Virus record (IMG/VR): IMGVR_UViG_3300029984_000001
Coordinates: 199,572-263,571 of that record
DNA: 64,000 bases
Direction: 5' to 3' (one strand)
The notes under the pieces: generated by a model
Database searches by the model: none
Seen by the model: only the letters and a program-made list of their open reading frames with translations
What the model was told of the DNA's origin: nothing
Made by a program: the position numbers and the translations under genes
Shown: positions 2,429-61,174 of the stretch, in pieces
Position numbering within the stretch: position 1 is the stretch's first letter
Layout: each line of letters starts with the position of its first letter

Positions 2429-3298
2429 CTACCCTAAATATATTTTTTCAGAATAATTCATTAATTGATTTTGAATGTGTTGTTCAATATTTACTATGAA
2501 TGTATCTCCATCTTTACTACAAACTTGTATTTGTCTGCCACCTTCTAACATTGTATAAGAATTATTTAATAAATCAAATGATTCTTTGAAGAAATAAAGA
2601 TTAGCAGATTCTTGTTTTATATATTCTATTATTTGATTATTTGTAACTGGAATTAATATACCAGCATCATTTTCTTGTACTACAAATTTATTTCCAATAT
2701 TCTCTTTACCATGAGCCAATAAAGCATTTTCTGTTACACCAACAATAGAGGTGGTATAGGCTCTCTTATGTGAAGGGTATATAACTCTATCCCAAGTAAT
2801 AATAGTTATATTTTCTACTTCAGCCCCTCTTGAAGTTTGATTGACAGTACCTAATGCTCTTAACGAAAAAGATGGTTTATCTCCATCCATTAAATCTAAA
2901 TTAAATGCTTCACCGTAAGAATTATTCGAACCTTTTATATGAGCTTTGATATCATTACCGTCCACCCAAAACTTAACTATTTTATTACATCTTAAAGATG
3001 GTTCTATAATTTGCTGTCTAGAAATTTCTTTAGACATTGGATGACCTTCTTCTCCATATAAGTTTCCAGTTGCTACTAATTCAGTCAATCTATCAGCTTT
3101 TAAAGCTGGTTTCATTTCCTTATCTGAATAGAATCTTTTGTTTCTATTTTGTATATTCATATCTTGTAATATAACTTCAGCAGTTACTCTTCTACCATCA
3201 TTATCAACTATCTTCATTTCTGTCTCATGCATACATGTAGCAGTTTCTATAATAACATACCCTATTTTCTTATCATAATTATTATAAGTCATACCCAT
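2429..3298 (-). CDS. Prohead core protease (T4 gp21-like)
   Basis: Motifs LQDMNIQNRNKRFY, YGEEGHP (His), SFSLRALG (Ser), WDRVIYPS. Confidence 0.9.
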   Translation of the reverse strand: MGMTYNNYDKKIGYVIIETATCMHETEMKIVDNDGRRVTAEVILQDMNIQNRNKRFYSDKEMKPALKADRLTELVATGNLYGEEGHPMSKEISRQQIIEPSLRCNKIVKFWVDGNDIKAHIKGSNNSYGEAFNLDLMDGDKPSFSLRALGTVNQTSRGAEVENITIITWDRVIYPSHKRAYTTSIVGVTENALLAHGKENIGNKFVVQENDAGILIPVTNNQIIEYIKQESANLYFFKESFDLLNNSYTMLEGGRQIQVCSKDGDTFIVNIEQHIQNQLMNYSEKIYLG

Positions 3299-6368: not shown

Positions 6369-8129
6369 ATGGCTACAGGAGGAACAAGAAAAAAGAAAAT
6401 AGTATCTGATGGTTATAGCAATAGTCCGTTTGCAGGAATTTCAGGACAATTTAGTAAAGTTGCTAAGGAAATTCAAATACAAGAAGGTGTCGATTTATTT
6501 GGGCAACCTGCATTAGCATTAAATAATCCTAAAGTAGTAAATACTTTAGAAAGTTTCTTTATAGAAGGTACTTATGATCAAAAATTATATGATGGTACTA
6601 CTAGAGGATATAATGCAAGAGCTTTACAAGAATATAAAAATGATATGAAAGAGTTATTTAAAAATGACGTTGAAGCTATTACTGAGTATACAGCAATGAA
6701 TTCAGTGAACCCTATTGTTACAACAGGATTAGCAATGCATAAATTAATTGCATTAAGAAATATATTTAGACAAGGTGTAATTCAAACTAACGTTGCAGTT
6801 GAACCTAGATTTACAATCAAGATGCAACATAGATATTTAATAACTCCAGATGGTAAAGAATTAGATTTAGTATTAGACCAAAATAAATTATCTGATGCTT
6901 TCAATTCAATTAACCCTAAGAGAGTTGTAACTTTAGAATTTACTGGAAATACTTGTAATACTGCTACTTTTGTTCCTGGTAAAAGATTAGTGGAATTATG
7001 TGGTGGTGTATTAGGTAGAGACAATCTAAATACAGATACCGAAATTCATGCTATTTACATAGAAGTACCAGATGAAGCTGCTATTAAAGCAGGTACTCTT
7101 GGAGCTACTAAAATAGAAAAGATTAAAAAGAGAATTCAATTTACTCCTCAATATGGTCCTAATAATATTACAGGGTTTAATCAACCTTTAGATTTAACTA
7201 AATTCGTTGAAGGTGCAACCGATTTATTTTCAGGTACATTAACTAATAATGAAATGATGTTAATAAGTGGATTAGGAATTATAAAGAAAGTAGATATTAG
7301 AATTCAATTAGATCCTTCTAATGGTTTACTATCAACATGTAGAGCAGGTTGGAGACATGATGAAACATTGGTCACTATTCCAAATGCTAACCCAATGAAT
7401 ATTCCAATATCTCCTGAAGAAATTAAGGATATCCAAGCTATGTATGGAATAGATCAACTATCTATGTATATGTCTATAATTAATGATGTATTAGGAAATG
7501 TTAAGGATGATAGTATCAGAAAAGATTTATATGCTTCTTTTGATAATATGAATGCGTCTGAAAGAAAAGTTAGTTGGTTTGATTTCGAACCAAGAGAAGG
7601 ATATAATAGAGATCATGTAAGTTGGAGATATTCTTCATTCATGGATATATTTGATACATTTGTAACAGATTTATTATATATCTTGAATGATGAAGACGTT
7701 ACAGTATCTATATTTGGTAGACCAGATGTAATTAGAAAGATTACTCCTACTGATTACAGCTACCAAGCACCATCTAGTATAGGACCAGTAAGTCTTGAAT
7801 ATACTAGAACTATTGCTACATCTGACAACAGAGTATACAACTTTGTATCTTCTCAAAAGTTAGGAGCTAGTAATGACTTAACAGTTATTCTAAATCCAAA
7901 TAATACAGATAGAATTATATATAGAGTTTACGATTATCAATTCTACGTTTCAAATGAAATCAAGAATGCTGATAATCATGTATTACCAGGTGTTCATGCA
8001 TTTGAAAGATTCAAATTCTTAGAATATCAACCAGTACAAGGTAAGTTCAGAGTATTTAATCCATCTGGTAGAAATGATGATAATACAAAATATCAAGATC
8101 AACTTAAAGATTTAAGAGATATAGCATAA
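6369..8129 (+). CDS. Major capsid protein (T4 gp23-like precursor)
   Basis: AITE|YTAMNSVNPIVTTGLAMHKLIALRNIF...VIQT resembles the gp23 post-cleavage segment; own promoter, strong SD and terminator; position after protease and scaffold. Confidence 0.75.
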   Translation: MATGGTRKKKIVSDGYSNSPFAGISGQFSKVAKEIQIQEGVDLFGQPALALNNPKVVNTLESFFIEGTYDQKLYDGTTRGYNARALQEYKNDMKELFKNDVEAITEYTAMNSVNPIVTTGLAMHKLIALRNIFRQGVIQTNVAVEPRFTIKMQHRYLITPDGKELDLVLDQNKLSDAFNSINPKRVVTLEFTGNTCNTATFVPGKRLVELCGGVLGRDNLNTDTEIHAIYIEVPDEAAIKAGTLGATKIEKIKKRIQFTPQYGPNNITGFNQPLDLTKFVEGATDLFSGTLTNNEMMLISGLGIIKKVDIRIQLDPSNGLLSTCRAGWRHDETLVTIPNANPMNIPISPEEIKDIQAMYGIDQLSMYMSIINDVLGNVKDDSIRKDLYASFDNMNASERKVSWFDFEPREGYNRDHVSWRYSSFMDIFDTFVTDLLYILNDEDVTVSIFGRPDVIRKITPTDYSYQAPSSIGPVSLEYTRTIATSDNRVYNFVSSQKLGASNDLTVILNPNNTDRIIYRVYDYQFYVSNEIKNADNHVLPGVHAFERFKFLEYQPVQGKFRVFNPSGRNDDNTKYQDQLKDLRDIA

Positions 8130-20460: not shown

Positions 20461-20511
20461 ATGATTGGGTGTATAAACACCCTTTTATTTTTTTATCTTT
20501 TTCTTCAGTTG

Positions 20512-20523
20512 AACATTTAGATA
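20512..20523 (+). promoter_or_regulatory. Late promoter AACA-N6-TA
   Basis: aaca tttaga ta followed by SD aaggagg. Confidence 0.7.
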
Positions 20524-20546
20524 ATTATGGGAAAGGAGGTTTTATA

Positions 20547-21746
20547 ATGGGTAGTAAATTTATTAATAAAAAATATAATGATACAGTTACTAATTTAGTA
20601 GAAGGTATAAATAATAGATTAAAAAATCCCTATTATATATTTAATGATAGACAACCTACTATTACAGATTATTATAATCAATCAGAATTAGAAACATCAT
20701 TAGATGAACATCTACAACAAGAGTTTGAAGATTTAGGGGATGAATCTCCTATAAGATTCAATAAAATAGAAGACTTAGTATTATATGGAATGCCAAAGTT
20801 AGAAGCTAATTATAATATAACAGAGAATGGTTTTGAATCAGATCAACTTCAAGGAGAAGCTATATTCCTACCTAATACTATAATACCAAAAAAAGGAGAT
20901 TTCTTTAGAATAAAATATTTAAACCAACCTTTATTATTTAAAGTAATCAGTTCTACAATAGATACAATAGATAATCTTAGTAATATATATAAAATTCAAT
21001 GGGTATATGAAAGACCAGATTGTGACGAAATAGAAAAACAAGTTGTTGACAACTTTACTTCTATAACAGAAAACTCGGGTACAGAATATAAATCTGTTAT
21101 AAAGAATTCAGAATATAAATTTATAGAAAAGATAGATGAAGTATTAACAACTTTAAAAGAGTACTATAAAGTATTATTTTATTCTGATAGAGTACAGGCT
21201 TTTATTTTTTCATTTAAACATGATTTTTTCTATGATCCTTATGCAGTAGAATTCATAATTAAACATGATTTAATTAGTACATTAGACGATTATTTATACA
21301 TTACACAACAATGTAGTTTGCATGAAACTTTTGTATTTGAATATGTAAAATCTATATTTACAGCTTTAGAAAAGAAAGATAAGAACCTTGGTAAATATAA
21401 AACGTTTTCTCAGGCTGAATTTATCCAAGATGTATTCGGAGTATTCTCTTTTAGATCAGAACCTTATTATAAAATTCTATATAGAGATTATATGTTTCCA
21501 AATAAGGAGATAATAAATTTCTTAGATGAAGATTTGATCGGTAGAATATCATCAAATACTTTATATAGCGAAGATGAATTAAATTATAGAAATATTATAA
21601 TAAAACATTTTAATAATACTGATATAAAGTTAAATGATGTAGAATGTATCTCAAGTATGCAATATAATACAAGTGTTAATCTATTTTATGAGATAATATT
21701 TGTGATATATATATTAGAAAAGAATGTCAAAATATTATTAAAATAA
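20547..21746 (+). CDS. Virion structural protein (possible neck/head-closure, gp14-like N-terminus)
   Basis: Late promoter; PKKGDFFRI...LFKV motif. Confidence 0.5.
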   Translation: MGSKFINKKYNDTVTNLVEGINNRLKNPYYIFNDRQPTITDYYNQSELETSLDEHLQQEFEDLGDESPIRFNKIEDLVLYGMPKLEANYNITENGFESDQLQGEAIFLPNTIIPKKGDFFRIKYLNQPLLFKVISSTIDTIDNLSNIYKIQWVYERPDCDEIEKQVVDNFTSITENSGTEYKSVIKNSEYKFIEKIDEVLTTLKEYYKVLFYSDRVQAFIFSFKHDFFYDPYAVEFIIKHDLISTLDDYLYITQQCSLHETFVFEYVKSIFTALEKKDKNLGKYKTFSQAEFIQDVFGVFSFRSEPYYKILYRDYMFPNKEIINFLDEDLIGRISSNTLYSEDELNYRNIIIKHFNNTDIKLNDVECISSMQYNTSVNLFYEIIFVIYILEKNVKILLK

Positions 21747-46353: not shown

Positions 46354-47532
46354 ATGGGTGTTTCTACAAATAAATATAGACACAAGATTAAATTTATTTA
46401 TAATCAAGATGGACAAATTAAGGAATTTAATAAAGATAGTATTACTAATCTTATCATAAATTATGATTATGATAAATATAATATGCCTATTATGTACATA
46501 AAGATATCATTAGAAAAATCATTGATAGATTATATGATAAAAAATAAGAATGATAAATATATAGGAATATATGTAGATAGTTTTATTTATGGAGATAATC
46601 TACAGATATCTACAGGTCATATTAAAGATCAATTCATCTATTTCATGGATGAGAATTTAAATGATGTTTCTGTATTGGATTATAATAAAGAAAATACAGA
46701 CTCTACAAATCAGAAGCTTGTGACTATCGGATTGATGAAATTAAGTAATATTGATAATAATAAGAAGGTCGTCAGTGGTATACATCACAATACGTCTTTA
46801 CTAGAAATTTTACTTTCTAATCTCACCCATATGAAGCTCTTAATGGAGCCTATGTCAAATGATACCGAGATAAATAGCTTTTTTATACCAGTTTATAATA
46901 GTATAGTTAAATTTTTAGAATATGTAAATAATCAGTACTCTATTTATAATACAGACTATAGATTCTTTATAGATTATGATAAAACTTATCTTTTAAGCAA
47001 TTCAGGAATTCCTGTTCCTTCTATAGATGAGAAATATAATAGAATAATATTTGATGTAAGTGATTTGACTTCTAATAATTCTAAGATAGAAGGAATGAGT
47101 ATAGATGATGATGCTCAATGTTATCTAATTCATATAACCAATAATGATATAAGTATGTTTCAAAATAAGAGTGTAATTAAAGCTACTAATACTATTATAG
47201 GTATTGATACAGAAGGTAATACTAGCACAGTATCATTAGATAATAATAGTACAATTGATACTAAGAATAAGGTTCAAATAATAAGAACTACTAACCTTAA
47301 TAATATTAATAAAATAAAAAATAATATAGAAACATCTTCTACTATAGTAAATATAATAAAATCTGAAATAGATAGTTCTATATTTACTATTAATAAAGAA
47401 TATATAATAAGAAATCATTCTGATACTAGAATAAATGGGAATTATTTACTTATAAGTAGAAAAGAAATTTATACTAGAAAAGATGATGCTTTTGTAATAT
47501 CATGTGTATTTTCTTTACGTAAAATATCCTAG
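46354..47532 (+). CDS. Putative baseplate hub protein (gp27-like)
   Basis: Late promoter; beta-rich; C-terminal NGNYLLISRKEIY pattern. Confidence 0.5.
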   Translation: MGVSTNKYRHKIKFIYNQDGQIKEFNKDSITNLIINYDYDKYNMPIMYIKISLEKSLIDYMIKNKNDKYIGIYVDSFIYGDNLQISTGHIKDQFIYFMDENLNDVSVLDYNKENTDSTNQKLVTIGLMKLSNIDNNKKVVSGIHHNTSLLEILLSNLTHMKLLMEPMSNDTEINSFFIPVYNSIVKFLEYVNNQYSIYNTDYRFFIDYDKTYLLSNSGIPVPSIDEKYNRIIFDVSDLTSNNSKIEGMSIDDDAQCYLIHITNNDISMFQNKSVIKATNTIIGIDTEGNTSTVSLDNNSTIDTKNKVQIIRTTNLNNINKIKNNIETSSTIVNIIKSEIDSSIFTINKEYIIRNHSDTRINGNYLLISRKEIYTRKDDAFVISCVFSLRKIS

Positions 47533-47555
47533 TGCATAATAGCACTAGGACTTTT

Positions 47556-48728
47556 TTATAATCCACTTGTATCTATTTTAGAATTATCAGTCCCTTGAAC
47601 TGTTGCTTTATCTTCAGGTTTAGTTGTAGAAGTATCACTCTTACCAACATGATCTTTTACATGTGATCTTATAATTTGCATATAAGCTTTATACATCTCT
47701 TCACATACTTGACATTTAGCAGTCATTAATTCACCGACAACTTTAATGTATATTTTAATCTTATCGACAGATTTATCACTACCACCTGCATTGTCAATTT
47801 GAGTTTGATCAACCTCTTTATTTGCAGTTCCTTGTTGATTTATAACAGCTTTATTAGGATCTGAAGTATTAGATACACCAGCTTGAGATGGTGTTTGATT
47901 AACAGTTGCTTGTTCTGGTGCTTTTATATCCACTTCATTTATTACAGTATTTTCATATAAATACGATTTATAACTCCCATAGGCAAAGAAATCAAAACTT
48001 TCTTTTGTAGCTCCTGTTGGTACTGGAGCCACTGGTTCTTGAGTTTTTGCTTCTCTGCTCATTTGTTCTATTCTTTTTTGTACATCATCAGCAGCTACTT
48101 TTATATTCTTTTTATCTGTATCAAATTTCTTAGCAATAGCTTCATAATTAACACAGAAGTTATAAGCATCTGTCATATTAAATTTAGAACTTTCTATTGC
48201 TAATTCGGAATCAGATCCTCTAAATAAAATCTTAACAGCTTCTTCAAAATTTATATCACCATTCTTCTTTTGAATAGCTTCTACTTTTTTAAAGTATTTA
48301 GTTACAAAAATTTCTTCCGATTCTAAATCTTTTTCTAAAGAACTAAAGTTAAATGCAGGAGCATATGTACCTAATAAATCGGGCTGACCAACTTGATAGT
48401 TATACATTGTGAAAGTATAATTCTGTAAGAATGTTTTCTTTAATATAATATCTTTATATTTAATAAGATAATTCTTATCTCTCTTAATCAAAGCACTCAT
48501 AGCTTCTATGAACCTTCCCCATATACGAGTTAAGGCTGCTATAATCTTAGCAATAGCTCCTTTTACCTTTTCTGCTACACCTTCTGTTACTACAAACATA
48601 TTATTCAATGTATTCTTCTCTTGTGCAGTTAGAACAGATTCTTGTATAGCAGCAATTAGATTAGTTTTATTAATTGTACTCTCTGATAAATATATAACGT
48701 AATTCCATTCATCACAATAATTATCCAT
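47556..48728 (-). CDS. Internal head protein paralog 5
   Basis: VTE|GVAEKVKGAIAKIIAALTRIWGRF...RDKNYLIKY. Confidence 0.7.
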   Translation of the reverse strand: MDNYCDEWNYVIYLSESTINKTNLIAAIQESVLTAQEKNTLNNMFVVTEGVAEKVKGAIAKIIAALTRIWGRFIEAMSALIKRDKNYLIKYKDIILKKTFLQNYTFTMYNYQVGQPDLLGTYAPAFNFSSLEKDLESEEIFVTKYFKKVEAIQKKNGDINFEEAVKILFRGSDSELAIESSKFNMTDAYNFCVNYEAIAKKFDTDKKNIKVAADDVQKRIEQMSREAKTQEPVAPVPTGATKESFDFFAYGSYKSYLYENTVINEVDIKAPEQATVNQTPSQAGVSNTSDPNKAVINQQGTANKEVDQTQIDNAGGSDKSVDKIKIYIKVVGELMTAKCQVCEEMYKAYMQIIRSHVKDHVGKSDTSTTKPEDKATVQGTDNSKIDTSGL

Positions 48729-48729
48729 A

Positions 48730-49818
48730 TTATATCTCTCCTCTCTTTATTTTTTGTACTTGAGCAATTGCTTTATAGCAAACACTTCTAGAAGATTTAT
48801 AACATTCTTTAAATGCATCTAATTTAGCACTAAAAGATATAGAATGTATAGCACTCATTTCTGATATTTGATCTGTCTTGGCTTTTACAAATAGATTTAA
48901 ATAATTTAGAGTCTCAGAATCAACACTATAAGCTGCGACATTATTAGCACCTGATACTTTATTATCAAAGTTCACACTAACTTTATTACCACCATCTTTT
49001 TTATCAACTTTTAATAAACTAGATACATAATTCTTTATATTAGTATATTGAATCTCAATTTGTTTCTTAGTATCTTCTACACTTTTCAAAGCAGTTTTAT
49101 AATCTTTTACAAATAAATAAGCAGTATTTACATTATCAGATTTAATTGTAATATCTTCTTTAGTGTCTTCATTATTTCTAAATACTTTAAATAAAGAATC
49201 TTTATAATCCTCTTTAGAAATTTTCTCTCCAGTTCTTCCAATTACTGAAGCTCTTAGAGAATCATAATAATCTCCATCTAATTTATTTTTAAATGTTTCA
49301 TAGTTATTCTTAGCAGCATCTGATTTCTCTCTATTAGTTTTATTATCATCCCAAGTACCAGAATCTAATTCTATAAAACCTTCTTGGAAATTTGCTTGAG
49401 CATCTATAATAGGAATATTATCTTTAAAAGTATAAGTATAATCATTTATATCAAACTCACAAGAATCATCAAATTTACCTAATAGATCAGCATGTTTAAT
49501 TAAATACTTATCAGATCTGATTGCACCATTTATAGCTCTAACAAATCTATCCCATAAGTTTTTAATAAATGATAAGAATTTAGATATAATACTAACTACC
49601 TTGGAAGTAAAATCAGAGAACCCTTCATTAATAGCAACAACATCTGATCCTGATTCTAATAGAGATCTATATAATTGTTTATTTACTTCTATCATATTTC
49701 TTTCTGATTCTAATACATAATTTAATGTAGTTGCAAAGAAATTTTCTTCTATACCACTTGTAGTAGATAAATCATTAGAATTGGTTTCATTAAGACTTAA
49801 ACACTTTATATCAAACAT
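48730..49818 (-). CDS. Internal head protein paralog 4
   Basis: INE|GFSDFTSKVVSIISKFLSFIKNLWDRF...SDKYLIKH. Confidence 0.7.
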   Translation of the reverse strand: MFDIKCLSLNETNSNDLSTTSGIEENFFATTLNYVLESERNMIEVNKQLYRSLLESGSDVVAINEGFSDFTSKVVSIISKFLSFIKNLWDRFVRAINGAIRSDKYLIKHADLLGKFDDSCEFDINDYTYTFKDNIPIIDAQANFQEGFIELDSGTWDDNKTNREKSDAAKNNYETFKNKLDGDYYDSLRASVIGRTGEKISKEDYKDSLFKVFRNNEDTKEDITIKSDNVNTAYLFVKDYKTALKSVEDTKKQIEIQYTNIKNYVSSLLKVDKKDGGNKVSVNFDNKVSGANNVAAYSVDSETLNYLNLFVKAKTDQISEMSAIHSISFSAKLDAFKECYKSSRSVCYKAIAQVQKIKRGEI

Positions 49819-49886
49819 TAATTATTCCTCCTTTAAAATTTATAAAAAACGAAAGGGTAAATAATACCCTTTCATTAATTTATATA

Positions 49887-50915
49887 CTAAACAAATGATA
49901 AATCATTAGGCATTTCATAACCTTCTTTAGCAGTCTTAGTTATTAATCTAAGAGCAACACCTTTATTTTGTCTATTTCTAGCTTTAATAGCAGTCAAGTA
50001 CGCTCCATTATAAGTTTGAATAGCAGATAAACAAGTCTTTAGATCTTCTACATCATATGTGCAAGCTCTTTGAGCATCCCCATTTTCAACAGATCCTGTT
50101 TCTTTACCAAGACTTTTCTTTCTACCATCTACTATACTGATTAATTTATTAATGAATGTTTTAACAGATTTATACGCTTTCATTGCATCAGTTTTATCTT
50201 GTTTAGCTGATGTAATTTCTGATACGATATTATCTGCATTTATAGTAACATTAACTTTAGAATCTTCACCCTTTCTAAATAATTTAAATAATTCTTTAGA
50301 ATATTCAGAAGATGATAATTCACTTTGACCTAATGCAGCTCCTCTTATTTTTGCTGATATTTCTTCAGACTTAGTATCTTTATGTGAAGATAAAATTTCT
50401 GAATCACTTCTTGTAAAGTATTTAGATAACTTACTTTCAGCTTTATCTATACCATTTTCAGATATACTGAAATTGAATCCTTTGTATTCAACCCCTACTG
50501 TACTTGCTGACTTAATTTTATCTCCATATTTCTTTACGAAAGCTTTATCATTCATGACGAATCTATTAATCATCATAATAAATTTATCAAATAACACTTT
50601 TATTTTCTTTCCTATAGAAATAAAAAAGTTTTTAACCTTTTCTAAAAATCCACCATCACCGAATGCTTCATTAACAGGCATTTCTACTCTATTGATAGAA
50701 AAATATTCTAATTCTTTTAAACCACAAGATTCACATATATCAAAATATTCTTCTTCAGTGAAAGCATTAATAGCTTCAGTACCTTCCATTGTAGGTTCAT
50801 AATGAAACTCTATACCTTGTACATCTGCAAATTCTCTTTGAATTGCTTCATCTGAAATATCTATAGGACCACTATTAGCATTTTCATTAAATATCATTGA
50901 ACTGTATCTTCCCAT
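49887..50915 (-). CDS. Internal head protein paralog 3
   Basis: VNE|AFGDGGFLEKVKNFFISIGKKIKVLFDKF...NDKAFVKKY. Confidence 0.7.
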   Translation of the reverse strand: MGRYSSMIFNENANSGPIDISDEAIQREFADVQGIEFHYEPTMEGTEAINAFTEEEYFDICESCGLKELEYFSINRVEMPVNEAFGDGGFLEKVKNFFISIGKKIKVLFDKFIMMINRFVMNDKAFVKKYGDKIKSASTVGVEYKGFNFSISENGIDKAESKLSKYFTRSDSEILSSHKDTKSEEISAKIRGAALGQSELSSSEYSKELFKLFRKGEDSKVNVTINADNIVSEITSAKQDKTDAMKAYKSVKTFINKLISIVDGRKKSLGKETGSVENGDAQRACTYDVEDLKTCLSAIQTYNGAYLTAIKARNRQNKGVALRLITKTAKEGYEMPNDLSFV

Positions 50916-50940
50916 ATTAATTTTCCTCCTTAAATTTGAT

Positions 50941-50952
50941 TATTTTAAAGTT
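50941..50952 (-). promoter_or_regulatory. Late promoter AACT-N6-TA
   Basis: Minus strand aact ttaaaa ta, overlapping the 13-bp hairpin at 50947..50985. Confidence 0.65.
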
Positions 50953-50997
50953 AAACTCTCAAAAAATAAATAAGAGTTTAACTTTTTATATTTTTTA

Positions 50998-52140
50998 TTA
51001 AGCTACTACTACTTCTAATGTATCTAGAGTTTCTAAAGTTTCATCATAAGCAGATTCTGCTAATGCATCTAAATAAACTTGTTCATTCATTTTAGATTTG
51101 GCAACTACTTTTGTGAATAGTGCTTTACATTGAGCAATATGCATTTTTACAAGACCAATATAAGCTCCATTTACCATATTATTAGCTGTTTGATTAACAG
51201 AAACTGTTCTACTAAATGTATTTAGTTTCTTAGTGTCACTAGAATTACCTGAAGCTGAACTAGTTCCTTTAAATGATGCAATTTCTATATTACTATTCTT
51301 TTCTGAAGATAATTTCCCTTTAGCTGAATCTATTTCAGATAACAACTTCTTGAAGAACTCTCCATTTTTCTTGTTAGAATCTTCTAATGTTTTGACTATT
51401 TTAGTAGTACCAAGTACTTCATTAACTTGTTTAGTCATTGAATCTGTTACAGATTCAAAACTATCTTTATTATCAAAGTAATCATTTTCTAAATCTTTCT
51501 TAAAGCTAGATCTAGTTGCACCAGACACTATTGAACTTAATAGAGATTCTAAGAAACTTCCATCATTTATTTCTTCATCTCTTTTCTTAAGAGCATCCCC
51601 ATTCATTCCATTTATTGAAGATAATGCACCAGCAGCTTCACCATCAAATTTACCAAATGGTATAGCTGTTAAACTTAATTCTTTCTTAAGAACTTTGAAT
51701 TTAAAGCTACCTTTATAACTCTTAGAATTACTATTAAAAGTATTTACATGTTTCTTATAGAACTTATTATAATCTCTAGTTAGGAAAGAAGAGATTTTAA
51801 CTTTAAGTGCTTCATATAAAGACTTAATCTTTTGCCATGCTTTCATAACCATAGTTTTAAGTTTTGATAAGACATCACCAAAACCTTCTGTTACTACAAC
51901 AATTTCAGCAGCTTCATTAACTAAACCCTCTTTTTCTAATTGTTCTTTTTTGAATGTAGCACCTAATTCATTGAACTCTTTTTGCATTGAGTCGTCGAAT
52001 GAGACTCTTTCATTTGTATATGATTCACCTATTAGTCTTAAGCAAGCACCTGCACTATAATCGAAACCTTCTATTACAGGTACATCTGTGTTGTCATTAA
52101 TACCATTTTCATTAAAAATATTAGAACTATATCTTCCCAT
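50998..52140 (-). CDS. Internal head protein paralog 2
   Basis: VTE|GFGDVLSKLKTMVMKAWQKIKSLYE...RDYNKFYKKH. Confidence 0.7.
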   Translation of the reverse strand: MGRYSSNIFNENGINDNTDVPVIEGFDYSAGACLRLIGESYTNERVSFDDSMQKEFNELGATFKKEQLEKEGLVNEAAEIVVVTEGFGDVLSKLKTMVMKAWQKIKSLYEALKVKISSFLTRDYNKFYKKHVNTFNSNSKSYKGSFKFKVLKKELSLTAIPFGKFDGEAAGALSSINGMNGDALKKRDEEINDGSFLESLLSSIVSGATRSSFKKDLENDYFDNKDSFESVTDSMTKQVNEVLGTTKIVKTLEDSNKKNGEFFKKLLSEIDSAKGKLSSEKNSNIEIASFKGTSSASGNSSDTKKLNTFSRTVSVNQTANNMVNGAYIGLVKMHIAQCKALFTKVVAKSKMNEQVYLDALAESAYDETLETLDTLEVVVA

Positions 52141-52171
52141 ATTAATTGTCCTCCTTTTATATTTTCTAATT

Positions 52172-52183
52172 TAATATAAAGTT
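52172..52183 (-). promoter_or_regulatory. Late promoter AACT-N6-TA
   Basis: Minus strand aact ttatat ta. Confidence 0.65.
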
Positions 52184-52201
52184 AATTGAATAACTATCAG
52201 A

Positions 52202-53347
52202 TTATGCATTTAGGAATTCTAAGGATTCATAAACAGCATTTTCTTCAATAGCATCCAATAAAGTTTGTTCTGTAAATTTAGATCTAGATACAACTTTAGT
52301 AAATACAGATTTACATTGAGCTATATGCATCTTGATTAGAGAAATATACTCTCCATTTATAATATTATTAGCAGTTTGATTAACAGAAACTATATTAGAG
52401 AATAATTCTAATCTCATTGAATCTATAGGATGAGAATCTTTTAAATAAACACTATTAGTATTATTTTTATCTTGACCAAATGTTGAGTTTTTCCATTCAT
52501 GTCTTTCATCTGTTGTATCATTAGATTTATTCAAAGTAGACTTCATTGAATCTATTTCAGATAATAGTTTTTTGTAATAATCATTATTAGATTTTTGAGC
52601 TTTATTTAAATTCACTATTATATCTTTAGTACCCAATACTGTTTGCACTTCCTTTATAATAGCATCTGATAATTGTTCATGGTCATCTTTGTCTTCAAAT
52701 AATTGACTATATACTTCTTTTTTATAATCAGATCTTGAACACCCTAAAAGTGATTCTAAATAAGAACCATCTGATATTTTTTCTTTTTCAGATTTAATTT
52801 CTTCTTCTTTTTTGTTTTCACATTTCTTTAAAGTAGTATGAGCCTTAGATTCAAAACTACCATATTTTAAAGCACTTAAATCTAAAGTAGATTTAGGCAT
52901 TTTAAAACTATATTTACCTTTAGTATTCTTTGCATAATTACTAAAAGTATTTTGATGTTTCTTATAAAACTTATTATAATCTCTAGTTAAGAAGGCTGAT
53001 ATTCTAACTTTTACAGCTTCATATAAAGACTTAATCTTTTGCCATGCTTTCATAACCATTGATTTAAGTTTTGACTTTATATCAGCAAAACCTTCTGTAA
53101 CAATTTCTATCTTAGCAGCTTCTGTAAACATTCCTTTAGCTTCTAAATCTGCTTTTGCAATTTCAGCAGCAATTTCATTCATTTCAGATTTCATAGATTC
53201 ATCAAACACAGATAGTTCTTGTTGACTAGCTTCTGCAATTATTCTTAGATAAGCTCCTGGATCACTACCATATCCTTCTATTACAGGAACTTCTTCCTCA
53301 TTATAACGTCCTATAGAAGTGGTATTACCTCTTAATAAATGTCCCAT
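52202..53347 (-). CDS. Internal head protein paralog 1
   Basis: VTE|GFADIKSKLKSMVMKAWQKIKSLYE...RDYNKFYKKH. Confidence 0.7.
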   Translation of the reverse strand: MGHLLRGNTTSIGRYNEEEVPVIEGYGSDPGAYLRIIAEASQQELSVFDESMKSEMNEIAAEIAKADLEAKGMFTEAAKIEIVTEGFADIKSKLKSMVMKAWQKIKSLYEAVKVRISAFLTRDYNKFYKKHQNTFSNYAKNTKGKYSFKMPKSTLDLSALKYGSFESKAHTTLKKCENKKEEEIKSEKEKISDGSYLESLLGCSRSDYKKEVYSQLFEDKDDHEQLSDAIIKEVQTVLGTKDIIVNLNKAQKSNNDYYKKLLSEIDSMKSTLNKSNDTTDERHEWKNSTFGQDKNNTNSVYLKDSHPIDSMRLELFSNIVSVNQTANNIINGEYISLIKMHIAQCKSVFTKVVSRSKFTEQTLLDAIEENAVYESLEFLNA

Positions 53348-53362
53348 TATATTTTACCTCCT

Positions 53363-54412
53363 TTAAAATAAACTATTACCATCATCTTCATCCGAATCTC
53401 CGTCATCATTTAATTTAGCTGGAGCTTGATCAATAATATCATCAGCTTTAAATTTAATAGATGATTCTTTTTTAGATTCAGCAGATGCTTTATTGTCGGC
53501 AGATTTCATATCTATTGCAACATGATTTGCAATCTTTGCAAATTTCTCTGCAATTGCGTGTTGTTTAGATGCAATTTCTTTTCTTTTTACAGGATCTATT
53601 GATGGGTTTGATTGAACTCTATAAGCATTTGCTTGTAGTAACTCAGCCTGTAATTCAAAGTAATCACTAATCTTGGTTCTTACATGAAAGAAGAAGAATA
53701 TCATCTCCCTCATCATAGGAATAATATTCATTAGGATTGCAATTAAAGCTGCACCACCAAGAACCCCTATAGCAGCACTAGTACCTAATAATCCTTTTTC
53801 TTTAGAATATCCTGAAATAATATAAGATAATGATTTTTGTACATCACCTTTATCGCAAGAGTTATTAAACTTTTCAAGATTCTTTAATAGTAAATGATCT
53901 TTTGTTTTATTCAAAGCAACTTTATCTAATTCTATATCAAAATTATCAGCATTAGGTGACTTTATCATTTCTACCGAGGTAGCTATTAATAATGATGTAG
54001 CAGATACAATTGAAAGTACAATCGAATTATATAATACCATAGGTAGTTCTATATTCAACATATAACCTTTCATAAAGAGATTTTTATTCTCTTCCATATT
54101 TTGAATTGCTTTGTAAATAGTATTAACAGAATCTTGACTTCCTTTGAATTCTTTTATTAATCCTGATATTATATCTAAAGAATCTAGAGTTGAACTATAT
54201 CCACTATATGATGTAATGTCTCCTTTACTCTTCTCTATATCACCAAAATCAATATTTTCAAATTTCTCACTTATAAGTTTATGATACAATCTATCACATA
54301 ATGAACTTATGGCAGAATGTTCTTCAGCTTCATTCATCGATGTAATTACATTTAACGTTTCATCATCGAAAATATCAAAGTGTTCATTTATAGCAACTTC
54401 ATATATACCCAT
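53363..54412 (-). CDS. Putative virion protein with a hydrophobic segment
   Basis: Leader MGIYEVAINE; LLGTSAAIGVLGGAALIAILMNIIPMM. Confidence 0.6.
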   Translation of the reverse strand: MGIYEVAINEHFDIFDDETLNVITSMNEAEEHSAISSLCDRLYHKLISEKFENIDFGDIEKSKGDITSYSGYSSTLDSLDIISGLIKEFKGSQDSVNTIYKAIQNMEENKNLFMKGYMLNIELPMVLYNSIVLSIVSATSLLIATSVEMIKSPNADNFDIELDKVALNKTKDHLLLKNLEKFNNSCDKGDVQKSLSYIISGYSKEKGLLGTSAAIGVLGGAALIAILMNIIPMMREMIFFFFHVRTKISDYFELQAELLQANAYRVQSNPSIDPVKRKEIASKQHAIAEKFAKIANHVAIDMKSADNKASAESKKESSIKFKADDIIDQAPAKLNDDGDSDEDDGNSLF

Positions 54413-54427
54413 ATCGAATCCCCTTTC

Positions 54428-56308
54428 TTATCTTATTTTAGACATAAGATTTATAATCTTTTTATAATCATTACCTTTATCTTCTCTCTCTAATGATCTA
54501 AATGCCATTTCTTCGTAAAGATCATCTCCAGTATCAAAGATAAATTTAGCAACTTCATTATTCTCATCTATAATACAGAAACACATTAAGTTATATGATT
54601 CCATTATAGGTCTAATTATTTTTGGATCTTCTAAATCAATATCTTCCATTTTCTTTAGATATTCTGCTTCTTCTTGAGTTATAGTTAAAGATGTAATTGC
54701 AGTAGCATCATTAATTGATCCGATAGTTCTATTGATTCTACTTTTAATTCCTCTTCTTTCTAATACTTTCCAAAGTTTAGAAGATGATCCTTTTCTTGAT
54801 TGAGAAAGAGCATCCAATTTAGCTCTATCAATAGCAAATAAGAAATCTCTACAGAATGATATTTCTCTAGTAGTAGCTTTTATCAAACCTATTAAGAAAT
54901 GTTTATCTACATGCTTAATGGTGAGCCTTTTTAATATATCATCTGAATTAACAGGATATAATTTAGCCTTAACTCCTATAACAGTTTGAGATTGTATTGG
55001 TCTACCATTATCCCCTTTAGATATGTAATTTACTATCATAGTAGTAGGAACCAATTCATTTGGTTTCTTAACATCATTATCTAAAAGTTGATTCTTTAAG
55101 TAATCAATTCTATTTCTTACTACATCAGCATCAAATCTAGACTTGTCTAAATTCATTTTATCTGCAAATTTTTCATCTTCTCTTCCATCTCTCTTTTCTT
55201 TATAATTTTGATTTAATTTATCTTGATCTTTTTGGTAATTAAATTTAGATAATTGATTATTATAATCTCTTACATCATTTTCAATATCTTTATTAAATTT
55301 ATTCACAGCTAATTGATGAGTTCTATCAGATTGAGATGTTTGATTATTCATTTTCTCTCTATCATTATCCATTCTTTCTTGATCTAATGCATTTCTGGTA
55401 TCAGATTCCATCCTTTTAAATTCGAAATCATTAGCATCTTTATTCACTTGATAATCTGACCCAGCATTTTTATAAGTCATATCAAAACCAGAATTAGTTG
55501 TTTTAATCATTATATCTTTTTCAGCTCTGTCTACAACTAAAGCGTAATCTGGGTTACTACTATAATAACCAACATCATATGATATACCATGTGCAGTTTG
55601 TCTTATATCTCCATTAGGGTCTCCAATTGCTTCAGTGACAGCTTTTTTATTTTTACCAATATTCATATATTTTGGGTCTGTATCTATGATACTGTCTAGA
55701 TAATCTAATTCTTCCATATCTGAATCTGTTAGTTTTTTATGTTTCTTTGATTTAGATTCATTTAATATATATGACTCATTTAAAGAATTTTTAGGTTTAA
55801 TGATTAAGTAGTCGGCTAGAGAAGATTCTTCTCTGATACTATTAGGTAAGTAATTGCTAAGGTTTCTTAAATCATTAGAATATTTTACATATAATTCTTC
55901 ATTATCAACCATAACAGCACCTTCTAATACTAAGTGATCCATCATGTTCATAAATTTATCTATTGTCATAGATCCATCTAATTTTAAATTAGTATGGAAA
56001 TTTTTAAGGTATGTAATTCCATCTTCAGCATTTGATATAGACAAAGCACTAAATAACATTTGAAGCATACTTACAGCTTTACGTTCCATTGCTTTTGAAA
56101 ACATAGAAGCATTGTCTATTGTCATACCTCTAGATACTACACAAGGAAATACTAAAGTTAAATTAGCTGTAGCCGCAGCTATTGATCTAAAACTTTTACC
56201 TTGGGATCTATTACTAATTGCATCTATAGCATCAGCATTTTTCAATTCTTCTAACATATCCATAGCATCTCTAATTACTGTTTCATGTATCATTTTACAA
56301 TAATTCAT
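54428..56308 (-). CDS. Putative virion structural protein with central charged insert
   Basis: Late promoter; leader MNYCKMIHE; LNE and VTE sites before a D/K/N/Q-rich coiled region. Confidence 0.6.
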   Translation of the reverse strand: MNYCKMIHETVIRDAMDMLEELKNADAIDAISNRSQGKSFRSIAAATANLTLVFPCVVSRGMTIDNASMFSKAMERKAVSMLQMLFSALSISNAEDGITYLKNFHTNLKLDGSMTIDKFMNMMDHLVLEGAVMVDNEELYVKYSNDLRNLSNYLPNSIREESSLADYLIIKPKNSLNESYILNESKSKKHKKLTDSDMEELDYLDSIIDTDPKYMNIGKNKKAVTEAIGDPNGDIRQTAHGISYDVGYYSSNPDYALVVDRAEKDIMIKTTNSGFDMTYKNAGSDYQVNKDANDFEFKRMESDTRNALDQERMDNDREKMNNQTSQSDRTHQLAVNKFNKDIENDVRDYNNQLSKFNYQKDQDKLNQNYKEKRDGREDEKFADKMNLDKSRFDADVVRNRIDYLKNQLLDNDVKKPNELVPTTMIVNYISKGDNGRPIQSQTVIGVKAKLYPVNSDDILKRLTIKHVDKHFLIGLIKATTREISFCRDFLFAIDRAKLDALSQSRKGSSSKLWKVLERRGIKSRINRTIGSINDATAITSLTITQEEAEYLKKMEDIDLEDPKIIRPIMESYNLMCFCIIDENNEVAKFIFDTGDDLYEEMAFRSLEREDKGNDYKKIINLMSKIR

Positions 56309-56333: not shown

Positions 56334-56345
56334 TAGTAATATGTT
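56334..56345 (-). promoter_or_regulatory. Late promoter AACA-N6-TA
   Basis: Minus strand aaca tattac ta. Confidence 0.7.
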
Positions 56346-60253: not shown

Positions 60254-61174
60254 ATGAAAAATCCTGTACTTGACATTTTAAAACTTCAAAAAGAAAATAT
60301 TGAAAAAGAACGAATATTAGAAAGTAAAAATAATTATGATCAAAGATTATCCGAGGAACAACAAGATATTGAAAGATATAATCATTATAAAGAATCATAC
60401 GGATTTATGGGTATGCAACCAAAACAATCTATATTTAAATCTAAGGTAGAAAAAGAATTATTATCTGAAGGTTTAAATAGAATATTCTCTAAATGTGTAA
60501 AGAGTTTATTGTATGAAAATGCAGCTTTATTAAAAAAACATTTAGTCAGCTCTTTTGTAAATGAATCAGGTGTTGATAATCTTATGAATAAATTTTCTGA
60601 AGAGTCATATTTATTATCAGAATTAACAAGATTAGTAGTAGAGTATTCTGAGATAATATGTGAGAAAGCTAGAAATAATAAAGATGAAATTATAGATCCT
60701 ACTGATAAAGAAGACTTCTATGAGAAAATAGACAGTATTGCAGATGTAGGAGATGTGCAAGATACAGTAAAATTAAGAGTTGCTGATGCTTTTAATCAAT
60801 TCAATATAAATAATACAGAAAAGAAAAGAGATATTGAAAATATAATGATTCAGTCAAGAGAAAATATTAATGCTAATATGACTGAGGAGATTATGGAATA
60901 TACAAAAATGCAAAATAAACAAAAAGAAAATGAGATTAGGAATTCAAAGAAAACAATTTTTGAATCTATGATGTATAATATAATAGAATCATGTTATAAG
61001 GATAATGATTTAAAAGAAAAGTTTTTTGAAGAATCAGGTCTACCTGATTTTGATAAAATATCAGATCATTGTAAAATAATGTATGGATTTATGGAGATGC
61101 TTAATACAACTGGAGCACAACATTTATCTCCTGAATATATTAAGGAACAAGTTGATAATTTAAGAATTTTATAG
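60254..61174 (+). CDS. Putative virion (head) protein
   Basis: Late promoter; helical; many [ILVF]xE sites. Confidence 0.55.
   Translation: MKNPVLDILKLQKENIEKERILESKNNYDQRLSEEQQDIERYNHYKESYGFMGMQPKQSIFKSKVEKELLSEGLNRIFSKCVKSLLYENAALLKKHLVSSFVNESGVDNLMNKFSEESYLLSELTRLVVEYSEIICEKARNNKDEIIDPTDKEDFYEKIDSIADVGDVQDTVKLRVADAFNQFNINNTEKKRDIENIMIQSRENINANMTEEIMEYTKMQNKQKENEIRNSKKTIFESMMYNIIESCYKDNDLKEKFFEESGLPDFDKISDHCKIMYGFMEMLNTTGAQHLSPEYIKEQVDNLRIL

What the first reader, a model, noticed from the sequence alone, without database searches (positions are those of the whole stretch)
47556..53347. Five tandem internal-head paralogs with conserved ends, variable middles and a 44-bp identical block
Seen: all share an acidic propeptide, [VI][TN]E|[GA], a long amphipathic basic helix, a D-x3-4-[YF]-x-x-K-[YH]-like motif and a C-terminal helix. 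Two share a 44-nt identical stretch (51809..51852 and 53016..53059) although their central regions have diverged strongly. Two have their own late promoters. Established: phiKZ-like phages package families of processed paralogous head proteins with post-cleavage amphipathic helices. Inference: an abundant ejected protein family diversified by recombination, possibly shielding the incoming (uracil) genome or engaging the membrane.
Basis: partly seen in the sequence, partly recalled or inferred. Interest (0 to 1): 0.6.

Follow-up and report, generated by a model that had tools for sequence, protein, structure and literature searches.

The report
Five processed internal head protein paralogs
A giant virus of peat bacteria carries five neighbouring copies of a gene for a helical protein that is probably trimmed by the virus's own protease and packed inside its head. 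These copies belong to a large unnamed family distantly related to the known internal head proteins of phiKZ-like giant phages, so this is a useful annotation but not a new kind of system.

Summary
Genes A to E (47556-53347, minus strand) are five tandem paralogs, and the 44-nt identical block is exact.

- **Host genome:** a 263.6-kb, 25% GC jumbo phage from peat metagenomes. It is distantly related to Bacillus phage AR9/PBS1 and encodes multisubunit RNA polymerase homologs.
- **Position:** the five genes sit where AR9 has gp215 and gp216. gp215 is annotated as a virion structural protein, and its BpSp homolog gp272 was found in virions by mass spectrometry.
- **Family:** a profile search found at least 1,690 unnamed metagenomic relatives. 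Of 121 relatives scanned, 29 hit Pfam phiKZ_IP. The five window proteins do not.
- **Structure:** AlphaFold models are confident helical bundles. Their best solved look-alike is phiKZ gp86, but the match is weak.
- **Processing signal:** every copy has a conserved hydrophobic-x-Glu|Gly/Ala/Ser site before the most conserved helix, and further such sites upstream. This is 12 times the proteome density. The window also encodes an S77/S80 head protease and a capsid protein with the same kind of site.
- **Not supported:** recombination (a 45-nt identical run also joins paralogs from different phages) and a uracil genome (a ThyA-family gene is present). Ejection and membrane action are untested.

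Verdict: a new member of a known kind.

The parts
47556..48728 (-). Paralog A (390 aa). The most divergent copy, with a roughly 100-aa low-complexity insert before the C-terminal helix. Predicted maturation site VVTE49|G.
   Evidence: (family profile E 6e-30)
48730..49818 (-). Paralog B (362 aa), closest to the family consensus. Predicted site AINE65|G. AlphaFold model has pLDDT 89.5 and pTM 0.88.
   Evidence: (E 1e-103)
49887..50915 (-). Paralog C (342 aa). Predicted site PVNE83|A. Mature part has pI 9.4.
50998..52140 (-). Paralog D (380 aa). Predicted site VVTE85|G lies in a disordered linker just before a long helix (87-139). AlphaFold model has pLDDT 78.7.
52202..53347 (-). Paralog E (381 aa), 48% identical to D. 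Predicted site IVTE85|G.
48579..48590 (-). Codons of the conserved site in A (VTEG). Homologous codons are B 49621-49632 (INEG), C 50664-50675 (VNEA), D 51883-51894 (VTEG) and E 53090-53101 (VTEG).
   Evidence: The Glu is conserved in 103 of 117 family members.
51809..51852 (-). 44-nt block in D, identical to the block in E. It encodes MVMKAWQKIKSLYEA of the first mature helix.
53016..53059 (-). 44-nt block in E, identical to 51809-51852.
50870..50931 (-). 62-nt stretch spanning the ribosome-binding site and the first 15 codons of C (MGRYSSMIFNEN). It is 85% identical to 52095-52156 at the start of D, although C and D share only 25% amino-acid identity overall.
56334..56345 (-). AR9-type late promoter motif AACATATTACTA, 37 nt upstream of gene G. 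Likely start of the G-F-E-D-C(-B-A) transcription unit.
52172..52183 (-). Late-promoter-like AACT-N6-TA upstream of D.
50941..50952 (-). Late-promoter-like AACT-N6-TA upstream of C. It overlaps the 3' arm of a 13-bp hairpin (50947-50985) that follows D.
49848..49876 (-). Intrinsic terminator (12-bp stem followed by a T run) between C and B. No promoter motif follows it, so B and A probably depend on read-through.
47526..47551 (.). Bidirectional terminator hairpin that ends the array and the convergent gene 46354-47532.
53363..54412 (-). Gene F (349 aa). Homolog of the virion protein AR9 gp214 / BpSp gp271. Not a member of the five-gene family. Has a membrane-span-like segment at residues 213-231.
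54428..56308 (-). Gene G (626 aa). Its C-terminal part is homologous to the virion protein AR9 gp213.
2429..3298 (-). Head maturation protease (Pfam Peptidase_S77 and Peptidase_S80, both above cut-off). Homolog of AR9 gp113. The presumed processing enzyme.
6369..8129 (+). Major head protein. It has IQIQE|G at about residue 39 and a late promoter motif at -42.

Best explanation
A to E encode five paralogous precursors of internal head proteins of an AR9-like jumbo phage.

**Shown**
- They belong to one large, unnamed family of about 360-aa helical-bundle proteins.
- The family usually occurs in tandem arrays next to virion genes.
- It includes AR9 gp215/gp216 and is distantly related to the phiKZ internal head protein family (Pfam PF12699).

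**Inferred**
- The genes are transcribed late, from AAC[AT]-N6-TA promoters upstream of G, D and C. A terminator after C lowers expression of B and A.
- The acidic N-terminal part (49-85 aa) brings each precursor into the prohead, as T4 capsid-targeting sequences and SPN3US/phiKZ propeptides do.
- The S77/S80 head protease (2429-3298) then cuts after Glu in hydrophobic-x-Glu|Gly/Ala/Ser sites. One conserved site lies directly before the most conserved helix. Another 1 to 4 sites lie upstream and would chop the propeptide into small pieces.
- The mature 29-38 kDa helical proteins stay inside the DNA-filled head. C, D and E are basic; A and B are near neutral.

**Analogy only**
- The mature proteins form an internal body or bolus that leaves with the DNA at infection.
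For: **Synteny with AR9**
- The gene order gp211-gp212 / gp213-gp214-[gp215, gp216] / gp217 matches I-H / G-F-[E D C B A] / Z.
- AR9 gp215 is annotated as a virion structural protein.
- BpSp gp272 gave 11 peptides and 31% coverage in purified virions.

**Homology**
- hhalign of the 121-sequence family against AR9 gp215/216 plus BpSp 272/273: probability 95.6%, E 1.1e-8, 196 columns.
- The family profile hits AR9 gp215 at 1e-6.
- 1,690 representative proteins match at E <= 1e-3, and 113 at E <= 1e-30.
- 29 of 121 members hit PF12699 at E <= 0.01 (best 3.3e-7). No other Pfam family exceeds 3 members.
- An HMM built only from phiKZ gp92-96 hits member P0095 at 1.1e-7 over residues 47-330.
- ESM Atlas neighbours include clusters that carry PF12699.

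**Fold**
- Confident helical models.
- phiKZ gp86 ranks 1st (Z 9.2, 229 residues aligned) and 2nd (Z 8.2, 223 aligned) of 48,161 chains. In both cases the match covers exactly the predicted mature part.
- BFVD hits include AR9 gp216 (1.7e-4) and virion proteins of phiKZ-like phages.

**Processing**
- The protease is in the window.
- The site Glu is conserved in 103 of 117 members.
- There are 17 sites in 367 N-terminal residues, against 8 in 1,488 mature residues and 0.37 per 100 aa in the proteome: binomial p 1e-13.
- E, D, A and B are among the six highest-ranked proteins in the proteome for such sites.
- The capsid proteins of this phage and of AR9 carry the same kind of N-terminal sites, including ILGE|GFSD in AR9.
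- Double-length relatives keep the site at the homologous column of both halves.

**Array stability**
- The five-gene array is kept in two other phages, L005 and L020.
- B-, C- and D/E-type copies are separate, widely populated clades.
Against: - None of the five window proteins reaches any Pfam or PHROG threshold. PF12699 finds nothing in this genome.
- PF12699 hits in relatives are mostly 17-21 bits, below the 27-bit cut-off, and cover only the site-plus-first-helix region.
- Profile-profile comparison with five phiKZ internal proteins alone failed (probability 3.7%).
- Z scores of 8-9 are within the range that helical bundles reach by chance (notes).
- No proteomic, N-terminal or expression data exist for this phage, and no RNA runs hold it.
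- AR9 gp216 is not annotated as a virion protein.
- The best solved look-alike, gp86, is a fixed capsid-lining protein, not an ejected one.
- The enrichment statistic counts related paralogs and includes the five sites used to define the boundary. Without them it is 12 in 367, still about 9-fold.
Confidence: 0.65

Rival explanations
1. They are fixed minor capsid proteins that line or cement the inner face of the large capsid, like phiKZ gp86 in the vertex-binding complex. They are processed but are neither ejected nor part of an inner body. The different paralogs would occupy different lattice positions.
For: - phiKZ gp86 is the best or second-best solved structural match for two independent paralog models, over the whole mature domain.
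- gp86 is itself cut near residue 120 and shows a weak PF12699 match.
- Inner-surface densities were reported for PBS1 capsids (cited in PMC11297242).
- In phiKZ even the internal proteins gp93 and gp162 leave N-terminal pieces bound to the shell.
Against: - Z 8-9 is not decisive for helical bundles.
- No sequence match to PF25617.
- The sequence signal in relatives points to PF12699, not to the gp86 family.
- Copy number varies from 2 to 5 between related phages that presumably have similar capsids. That fits cargo better than lattice parts.
Confidence: 0.2
2. They are scaffold or core proteins that build the prohead interior and are then fully degraded and expelled, so little or nothing remains in mature virions.
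For: - They have acidic N-terminal parts with many protease-type sites.
- They are encoded in the same 64-kb window as the protease and capsid genes.
Against: - Sites are concentrated in the N-terminal 49-85 residues and are rare in the 260-340-residue remainder.
- BpSp gp272 gave 31% coverage in virions.
- A separate acidic repeat protein beside the capsid gene (5449-6294) is a better scaffold candidate.
Confidence: 0.07
3. They are ejected membrane-active proteins with a ClyA-type alpha-pore-former architecture that open or line a path through the host membrane.
For: - The top Foldseek PDB rows are Hbl L1, Hbl B, NheA, XaxB, AhlB and SmhA.
- MakE appears at Z 6.2.
- The fold is a long helical bundle with a small two-strand element at one end.
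Against: - All those matches are non-significant: E 0.2-1.8, TM 0.11-0.18.
- No hydrophobic segment or tongue exists; the 19-residue hydropathy maximum is 1.2 or less.
- The neighbouring F protein, not A to E, carries a membrane-span-like segment.
Confidence: 0.05

Closest known systems
phiKZ-type internal head proteins, Pfam PF12699 phiKZ_IP (phiKZ gp92-96, gp162/163; SPN3US gp53/gp54)
   Same: - Tandem paralogs whose number varies between phages. The literature gives 2-7 for PF12699 (PMC5694885); here it is 2-5.
- Long N-terminal propeptides removed after Glu by an S80/S77-type head protease.
- A helix-rich mature domain.
- Conserved N-termini in otherwise diverged paralogs: SPN3US gp53/54 share 15 identical residues, and C and D here share MGRYSS.IFNEN.
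- 24% of this family's members give PF12699 hits.
   Different: - The five window proteins do not match PF12699 at all.
- The P3 residue of the site is hydrophobic (Val/Ile, as in T4) rather than Ser/Ala/Gly as in phiKZ and SPN3US.
- Propeptides are 49-85 aa, against about 125.
- The host phage lineage is related to AR9/PBS1, which encodes no chimallin. Chimallin was not searched for in this genome.
Bacillus phage AR9 gp215 / gp216 and BpSp gp272 / gp273 (unnamed)
   Same: - Same genomic slot between the gp214 and gp217 homologs.
- Profile-profile homology: 95.6%, E 1.1e-8.
- A paralog pair.
- gp215 is annotated as a virion protein, and gp272 was detected in virions by MS.
   Different: - Two copies rather than five.
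- Pairwise BLAST similarity is undetectable.
- The best conserved Glu site in the AR9 group (LE|AE, LE|SE) aligns with the upstream site of B (VLE37|SE), not with the main site.
phiKZ gp86, vertex-binding minor capsid protein (Pfam PF25617; PDB 8y6v chain G)
   Same: - An elongated helical bundle.
- Proteolytically processed, with the modelled part starting near residue 120.
- Best or second-best structural match to the predicted mature domains.
   Different: - No sequence similarity.
- The Z scores are in the chance range.
- gp86 is a single-copy gene with a fixed place in the shell.
T4 internal proteins IPI-IPIII and Alt with capsid-targeting sequences
   Same: - Works alike: an N-terminal targeting peptide is removed by a gp21-type (S77) protease at hydrophobic-x-Glu.
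- The mature basic proteins are packaged with the DNA and injected (known biology, summarised in PMC5694885).
   Different: - No homology.
- T4 targeting peptides are 10-20 aa with one site, whereas here they are 49-85 aa with 2-5 sites.
- The mature proteins here are larger helical bundles.

Membership tests
Pfam PF12699 phiKZ_IP | Match to the Pfam model at or above the 27-bit gathering score | tested here: not met
   - No hit for A to E at E <= 1, and none anywhere in the genome.
- Among 121 family relatives, 29 hit at E <= 0.01 (best 3.3e-7), mostly at 17-21 bits.
- Sister-phage copies A5, D5 and C5 give 9-13 bits.
Pfam PF12699 phiKZ_IP | Helix-rich mature domain | tested here: met
   - AlphaFold models of B (pLDDT 89.5) and D (78.7) are long-helix bundles.
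- Weak BFVD matches to virion and internal head proteins of phiKZ-like phages, E 6e-3 to 8e-2.
Pfam PF12699 phiKZ_IP | Tandem paralogs with copy number varying between related phages | tested here: met
   - Five copies here and in L005 and L020.
- Three or four in L011 and L012.
- Two in AR9 and BpSp.
Pfam PF12699 phiKZ_IP | N-terminal propeptide removed after Glu by the head protease | not testable with these tools
   Sequence evidence only:
- a conserved site;
- 12-fold site enrichment;
- the protease gene present;
- the site in a disordered linker in the D model.
Pfam PF12699 phiKZ_IP | Present inside virions and ejected | not testable with these tools
   Only relatives give evidence: AR9 gp215 is annotated as a virion protein and BpSp gp272 was detected in virions by MS. 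Ejection has not been studied in this lineage.
AR9 gp215/gp216 family (unnamed) | Detectable sequence homology | tested here: met
   - hhalign 95.6%, E 1.1e-8.
- hmmsearch 1e-6 for gp215 and 1e-5 for gp272.
- Foldseek to AR9 gp216 at 1.7e-4.
AR9 gp215/gp216 family (unnamed) | Same genomic position | tested here: met
   The flanking genes F, G, H, I and Z are homologs of gp214, gp213, gp212, gp211 and gp217.
Pfam PF25617 PhiKZ_gp86 | Match to the Pfam model | tested here: not met
   No hit. phiKZ gp86 itself scores 516 bits.
Pfam PF25617 PhiKZ_gp86 | Shared fold | tested here: inconclusive
   Z 9.2 with 229 aligned (rank 1) and Z 8.2 with 223 aligned (rank 2). This is below the roughly 13 advised for helical bundles.
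ClyA-type alpha-pore-forming toxins | Significant fold match and a hydrophobic membrane-inserting element | tested here: not met
   Foldseek E 0.2-1.8 and TM <= 0.18. Maximum 19-residue hydropathy is 1.2 or less.

The most novel reading that the evidence does not exclude
This family, with at least 1,690 sequence clusters, could be the counterpart of the phiKZ inner-body or ejected-bolus proteins in the AR9-like branch. AR9/PBS1 itself has no chimallin nucleus; chimallin was not checked in this genome. The packaged-and-ejected helical protein apparatus would then predate the split of the RNA-polymerase-carrying jumbo phages. The mature proteins would act in the first minutes of infection, for example by coating or compartmentalising the incoming DNA in phages that build no protein nucleus. 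The double-length relatives would be true polyproteins that the head protease resolves inside the capsid.
Probability: 0.15. Interest if true: 0.7.

Novelty: new member of a known kind. Interest (0 to 1): 0.35.

Why it matters
- It gives a working annotation, a processing-site model and a profile for a large, entirely unnamed phage protein family that Pfam and PHROGs miss.
- It links the virion proteins of AR9/PBS1-like phages to the phiKZ internal head proteins.
- It provides a simple sequence signature for finding protease-processed head proteins in uncultured jumbo phages: clusters of hydrophobic-x-Glu|Gly/Ala/Ser sites before a conserved helix, also kept inside fused double-length proteins.
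- It does not reveal a new kind of system.

Tried and rejected
**Searches of the phage collection**
- A megablast and a tblastn of the region against 50,697 phage records found nothing.

**Family scans**
- Pfam and PHROG scans of the five proteins gave only sub-threshold noise.

**Word-based protein search**
- It found only six close relatives.
- An alignment-based locus search failed for lack of a conserved 7-10-column stretch.

**Solved structures by sequence**
- A profile search of the PDB found nothing below E 0.019.

**Foldseek against the PDB**
- Nothing was significant.
- The structure-atlas library was not available.

**Profile-profile comparison with phiKZ gp92-96**
- It failed at 3.7% probability. 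My single-sequence comparisons in the same script printed nothing because of a parsing slip and were not repeated.

**Sigma-70 promoter scan**
- 71 sites against 72.5 expected, so it is uninformative for this phage.

**Gene conversion as the cause of the 44-nt block**
- Considered and largely rejected.
- The same-codon fraction at conserved residues is 0.65-0.72 for all pairs, and the run has P = 0.035.
- An excess of sites shared by D and E in residues 61-120 (10 against 5; Fisher p 0.0009) came from a window chosen after looking.
- The other two phages have no such block, while D of L020 and E of L005 share 45 identical nt.

**Read laying (5,792 letters, within the operators' limit)**
- It returned contigs only. 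The few joints had short sides or low likeness and were not used.

**Complex prediction**
- Not run, because the report makes no binding claim.

Full report
**What is in the sequence**

The region 47556-53347 holds five consecutive minus-strand ORFs: A (390 aa), B (362), C (342), D (380) and E (381).

They are related in a chain:
- D/E: 48% identity, E 7e-114.
- C/D: 25% identity over the full length, E 7e-7.
- B/C: E 3e-11.
- A/B: E 5e-7.

A profile built from 117 family sequences, mostly metagenomic, scores all five. It includes a few of the window's own proteins. The scores are B 1e-103, D 6e-69, C 2e-66, E 7e-60 and A 6e-30. It finds no further copy in the 263,571-bp genome.

The 44-nt stretches 51809-51852 and 53016-53059 are identical and cannot be extended. 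All five proteins carry [VI][TN]E followed by G or A. This is followed by a conserved helix, a D-K-x-[FY]-x-K-K-[HY] motif and a conserved C-terminal helix.

The N-terminal parts are acidic (net -5 to -15). The first 40 mature residues carry +3 to +6. The whole mature proteins are basic only for C, D and E.

**Genome and neighbourhood**

The window is the last 64 kb of an IMG/VR virus record of 263.6 kb with about 25% GC. Near-identical DNA occurs in 24 peat metagenome runs, and none of them is RNA.

The genome encodes homologs of the AR9 non-virion RNA polymerase beta pieces and of UvsX. The genes around the array match AR9 in order:
- I = gp211
- H = gp212
- G = gp213
- F = gp214
- Z (46354-47532) = gp217

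The five genes therefore sit where AR9 has gp215, annotated as a virion structural protein, and its paralog gp216. In the related phage BpSp, gp271 and gp272 were found in purified virions. gp272 gave 11 peptides and 31% coverage.

Two other uncultured phages (L005 and L020) have the same five genes in the same order. For L005 the orthologs are 53-64% identical.

**Transcription signals**

The AR9 late promoter consensus is AACA-N6-TA (PMC5312081). In this genome it is concentrated 28-50 nt upstream of start codons, and so is AACT-N6-TA.
- G has AACA-N6-TA at -37.
- D has AACT-N6-TA at -43, and C has it at -37.
- An intrinsic terminator lies between C and B, and another lies after A.

B and A are therefore probably expressed by read-through. 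This is an inference.

**How big the family is and what it is related to**

Pfam, PHROGs, the phage collection and the word-based protein search left the proteins open. I therefore ran the exhaustive profile search.

It found 1,690 representative proteins at E <= 1e-3, 959 at <= 1e-10 and 113 at <= 1e-30. Nearly all are 340-390 aa and match over the full length. None of the ten hits whose clusters I looked up carries a name. In other contigs the family again forms arrays of three or four copies.

A tree separates three populated clades:
- a B-type clade of 60 members, with A as a long-branch sister;
- a C-type clade of 42 members;
- a D/E-type clade of 16 members.

The D/E duplication is older than the split from the L005 phage. 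The array is therefore old and its members are long-maintained types.

Homology to the AR9 proteins is supported at 95.6% probability, E 1.1e-8 over 196 columns.

The link to phiKZ internal head proteins is indirect but consistent:
- 29 of 121 members hit PF12699 at E <= 0.01 (best 3.3e-7), while no other Pfam family exceeds three members.
- The hits cover profile positions of about 49-141, which is the site and the first helix.
- An HMM built from phiKZ gp92-96 alone hits member P0095 at 1.1e-7 over residues 47-330.
- ESM Atlas neighbours include clusters in which 12% of members carry PF12699.

The five window proteins themselves do not match PF12699.

**Structure**

- B folds with pLDDT 89.5 and pTM 0.88 into long helices plus two short strands.
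- D folds with pLDDT 78.7. Its propeptide is poorly defined, residues 77-84 are disordered, and a long helix starts at residue 87, directly after the predicted cut.
- No solved structure matches by sequence or significantly by Foldseek.
- In the exhaustive structural alignment, PDB 8y6v chain G ranks first for B (Z 9.2, 229 aligned, model residues 61-362) and second for D (Z 8.2, 223 aligned, residues 86-374).
- That chain is phiKZ gp86, a processed, helical, vertex-binding protein on the inner capsid face.
- The Z values lie in the range that helical bundles reach by chance. I treat this as a lead that was repeated twice, not as proof.
- BFVD gives clear matches to uncultured Myoviridae proteins and to AR9 gp216 (1.7e-4). 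It gives weak matches to virion or internal head proteins of phiKZ-like phages.

**Processing**

The window encodes a head maturation protease. It matches Peptidase_S77 at 2.9e-10 and Peptidase_S80 at 5.7e-9, both above cut-off, and is a homolog of AR9 gp113. Enzymes of these families cut after Glu. This is established knowledge, summarised in PMC5694885.

- The site Glu is kept in 103 of 117 family members.
- The motif [VILMF]-x-E-[GAS] occurs 17 times in the 367 N-terminal residues of A to E. It occurs 8 times in their 1,488 mature residues, and the proteome average is 0.37 per 100 aa. The binomial p is 1e-13. Without the five boundary sites the enrichment is still about 9-fold.
- E, D, A and B are among the six highest-ranked proteins in the proteome for such N-terminal sites.
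- The capsid protein here has IQIQE|G near residue 39.
- The AR9 capsid protein has five such sites in its first 84 residues, including ILGE|GFSD.
- 24 of the 150 listed relatives are double-length. In most of the 14 I examined, both halves keep the motif at the homologous column, which suggests polyproteins.

**The 44-nt block and recombination**

The block encodes MVMKAWQKIKSLYEA, the most conserved helix. Evidence bearing on recombination:
- Codons coincide at 65-72% of conserved degenerate residues in every pair, orthologous or paralogous. The run of 20 coinciding codons in D/E has permutation P = 0.035.
- Sites where D equals E but differs from both sister-phage copies are over-represented in residues 61-120 (10 against 5; Fisher p 0.0009). 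That window was chosen after looking.
- With a third phage added, the within-genome D/E pairs of the other two phages have no long identical run. D of L020 and E of L005, which are paralogs in different genomes, share 45 identical nt.

Purifying selection plus strong AT codon bias is therefore enough to explain the block. A short conversion tract is possible but not required.

C and D also share a 62-nt stretch that is 85% identical, covering the ribosome-binding site and the first 15 codons. The peptide MGR[YF]..[IV]F.E is also kept in L005. This again points to constraint, perhaps a first cleavage site or a targeting signal, as in SPN3US gp53/gp54.

**Claims not supported**

- *Uracil genome:* a full-length ThyA-family gene is present at genome positions 20118-20891 (8.7e-91). 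No ThyX or dUTPase was found. No Ugi or dCMP deaminase homolog was found by tblastn. A PBS1-type uracil genome is not indicated, but DNA chemistry cannot be read from this alone.
- *Membrane action:* A to E lack hydrophobic segments, and the matches to ClyA-type toxins are non-significant.

**Verdict**

The five genes are best read as late-expressed, protease-processed internal head protein paralogs. They are divergent relatives of the phiKZ internal head protein group and direct relatives of AR9 gp215/gp216.

Whether the mature proteins are ejected cargo (my preferred reading, by analogy) or shell-lining proteins like gp86 cannot be decided with these tools.

Noticed in passing
window 5449-6294 (+): A 281-aa, very acidic protein between a 678-aa ORF and the capsid gene. 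It has four repeats of NNYNLEDETN and a helical C-terminus. It is a scaffold-like candidate whose repeats each hold a hydrophobic-x-Glu (NLE|D). It has no Pfam or PHROG match.
   Followed up: partly
window 2429-3298 (-) and 6369-8129 (+): The head maturation protease (S77/S80) and the major head protein lie about 45 kb from the paralog array. The capsid protein has a late promoter motif at -42 and IQIQE|G near residue 39.
   Followed up: yes
window 53363-54412 (-), gene F: This AR9 gp214 homolog has a membrane-span-like segment (residues 213-231, hydropathy 2.33) and AINE|H at residue 10. The AR9 homolog of gene G (gp213) is annotated with a transmembrane domain. If any virion protein of this cluster touches the host membrane, these are better candidates than A to E.
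   Followed up: partly
genome G000:C1:20118-20891 (+), outside the window: A full-length thymidylate-synthase-family gene (PF00303, 8.7e-91) in a phage otherwise related to the uracil-DNA phages AR9/PBS1. No dUTPase, ThyX or Ugi homolog was found. The DNA may hold thymine or a modified pyrimidine rather than uracil.
   Followed up: partly
whole genome; examples at window 6369, 35360, 46354, 56708 and 60254: AAC[AT]-N6-TA is concentrated 28-50 nt upstream of start codons: 29 of 40 AACA hits and 20 of 31 AACT hits. This distant relative therefore seems to keep the AR9 late promoter with a relaxed fourth base. The AR9 early-promoter core TATATATTAT occurs 31 times on the plus strand and 15 times on the minus strand.
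   Followed up: partly
relatives P0013, P0014, P0016 and others; locus L012:3177-6395: 24 of the 150 best family hits are 750-1,040 aa and contain two family domains in one open frame. In most of the 14 examined, both halves keep the Glu site, so they look like polyproteins.
   Followed up: partly
genome G000:C1:188606-189082 (+) and window 60254-61174 (+): A 158-aa protein has five hydrophobic-x-Glu-[GAS] sites in its first 62 residues. A 306-aa late-promoter gene has three such sites in its first 104 residues. Both are further candidates for protease-processed head proteins.
   Followed up: no
window 47556-53347 in runs X4, X9, X11 and X20: The peat samples also hold contig pieces only 85-95% identical to parts of the array, so related strains appear to coexist. 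Assembler contigs end at the 44-nt repeat.
   Followed up: partly
AR9 gp095 (NC_031039.1 79052-79858) and its BpSp counterpart: This 268-aa AR9 virion protein gives a weak PF12699 match (E 0.011; 5e-5 in BpSp). Its BFVD model resembles model B (1.5e-3). It may be a third, shorter member of the same superfamily. No homolog was found in this genome by tblastn.
   Followed up: partly
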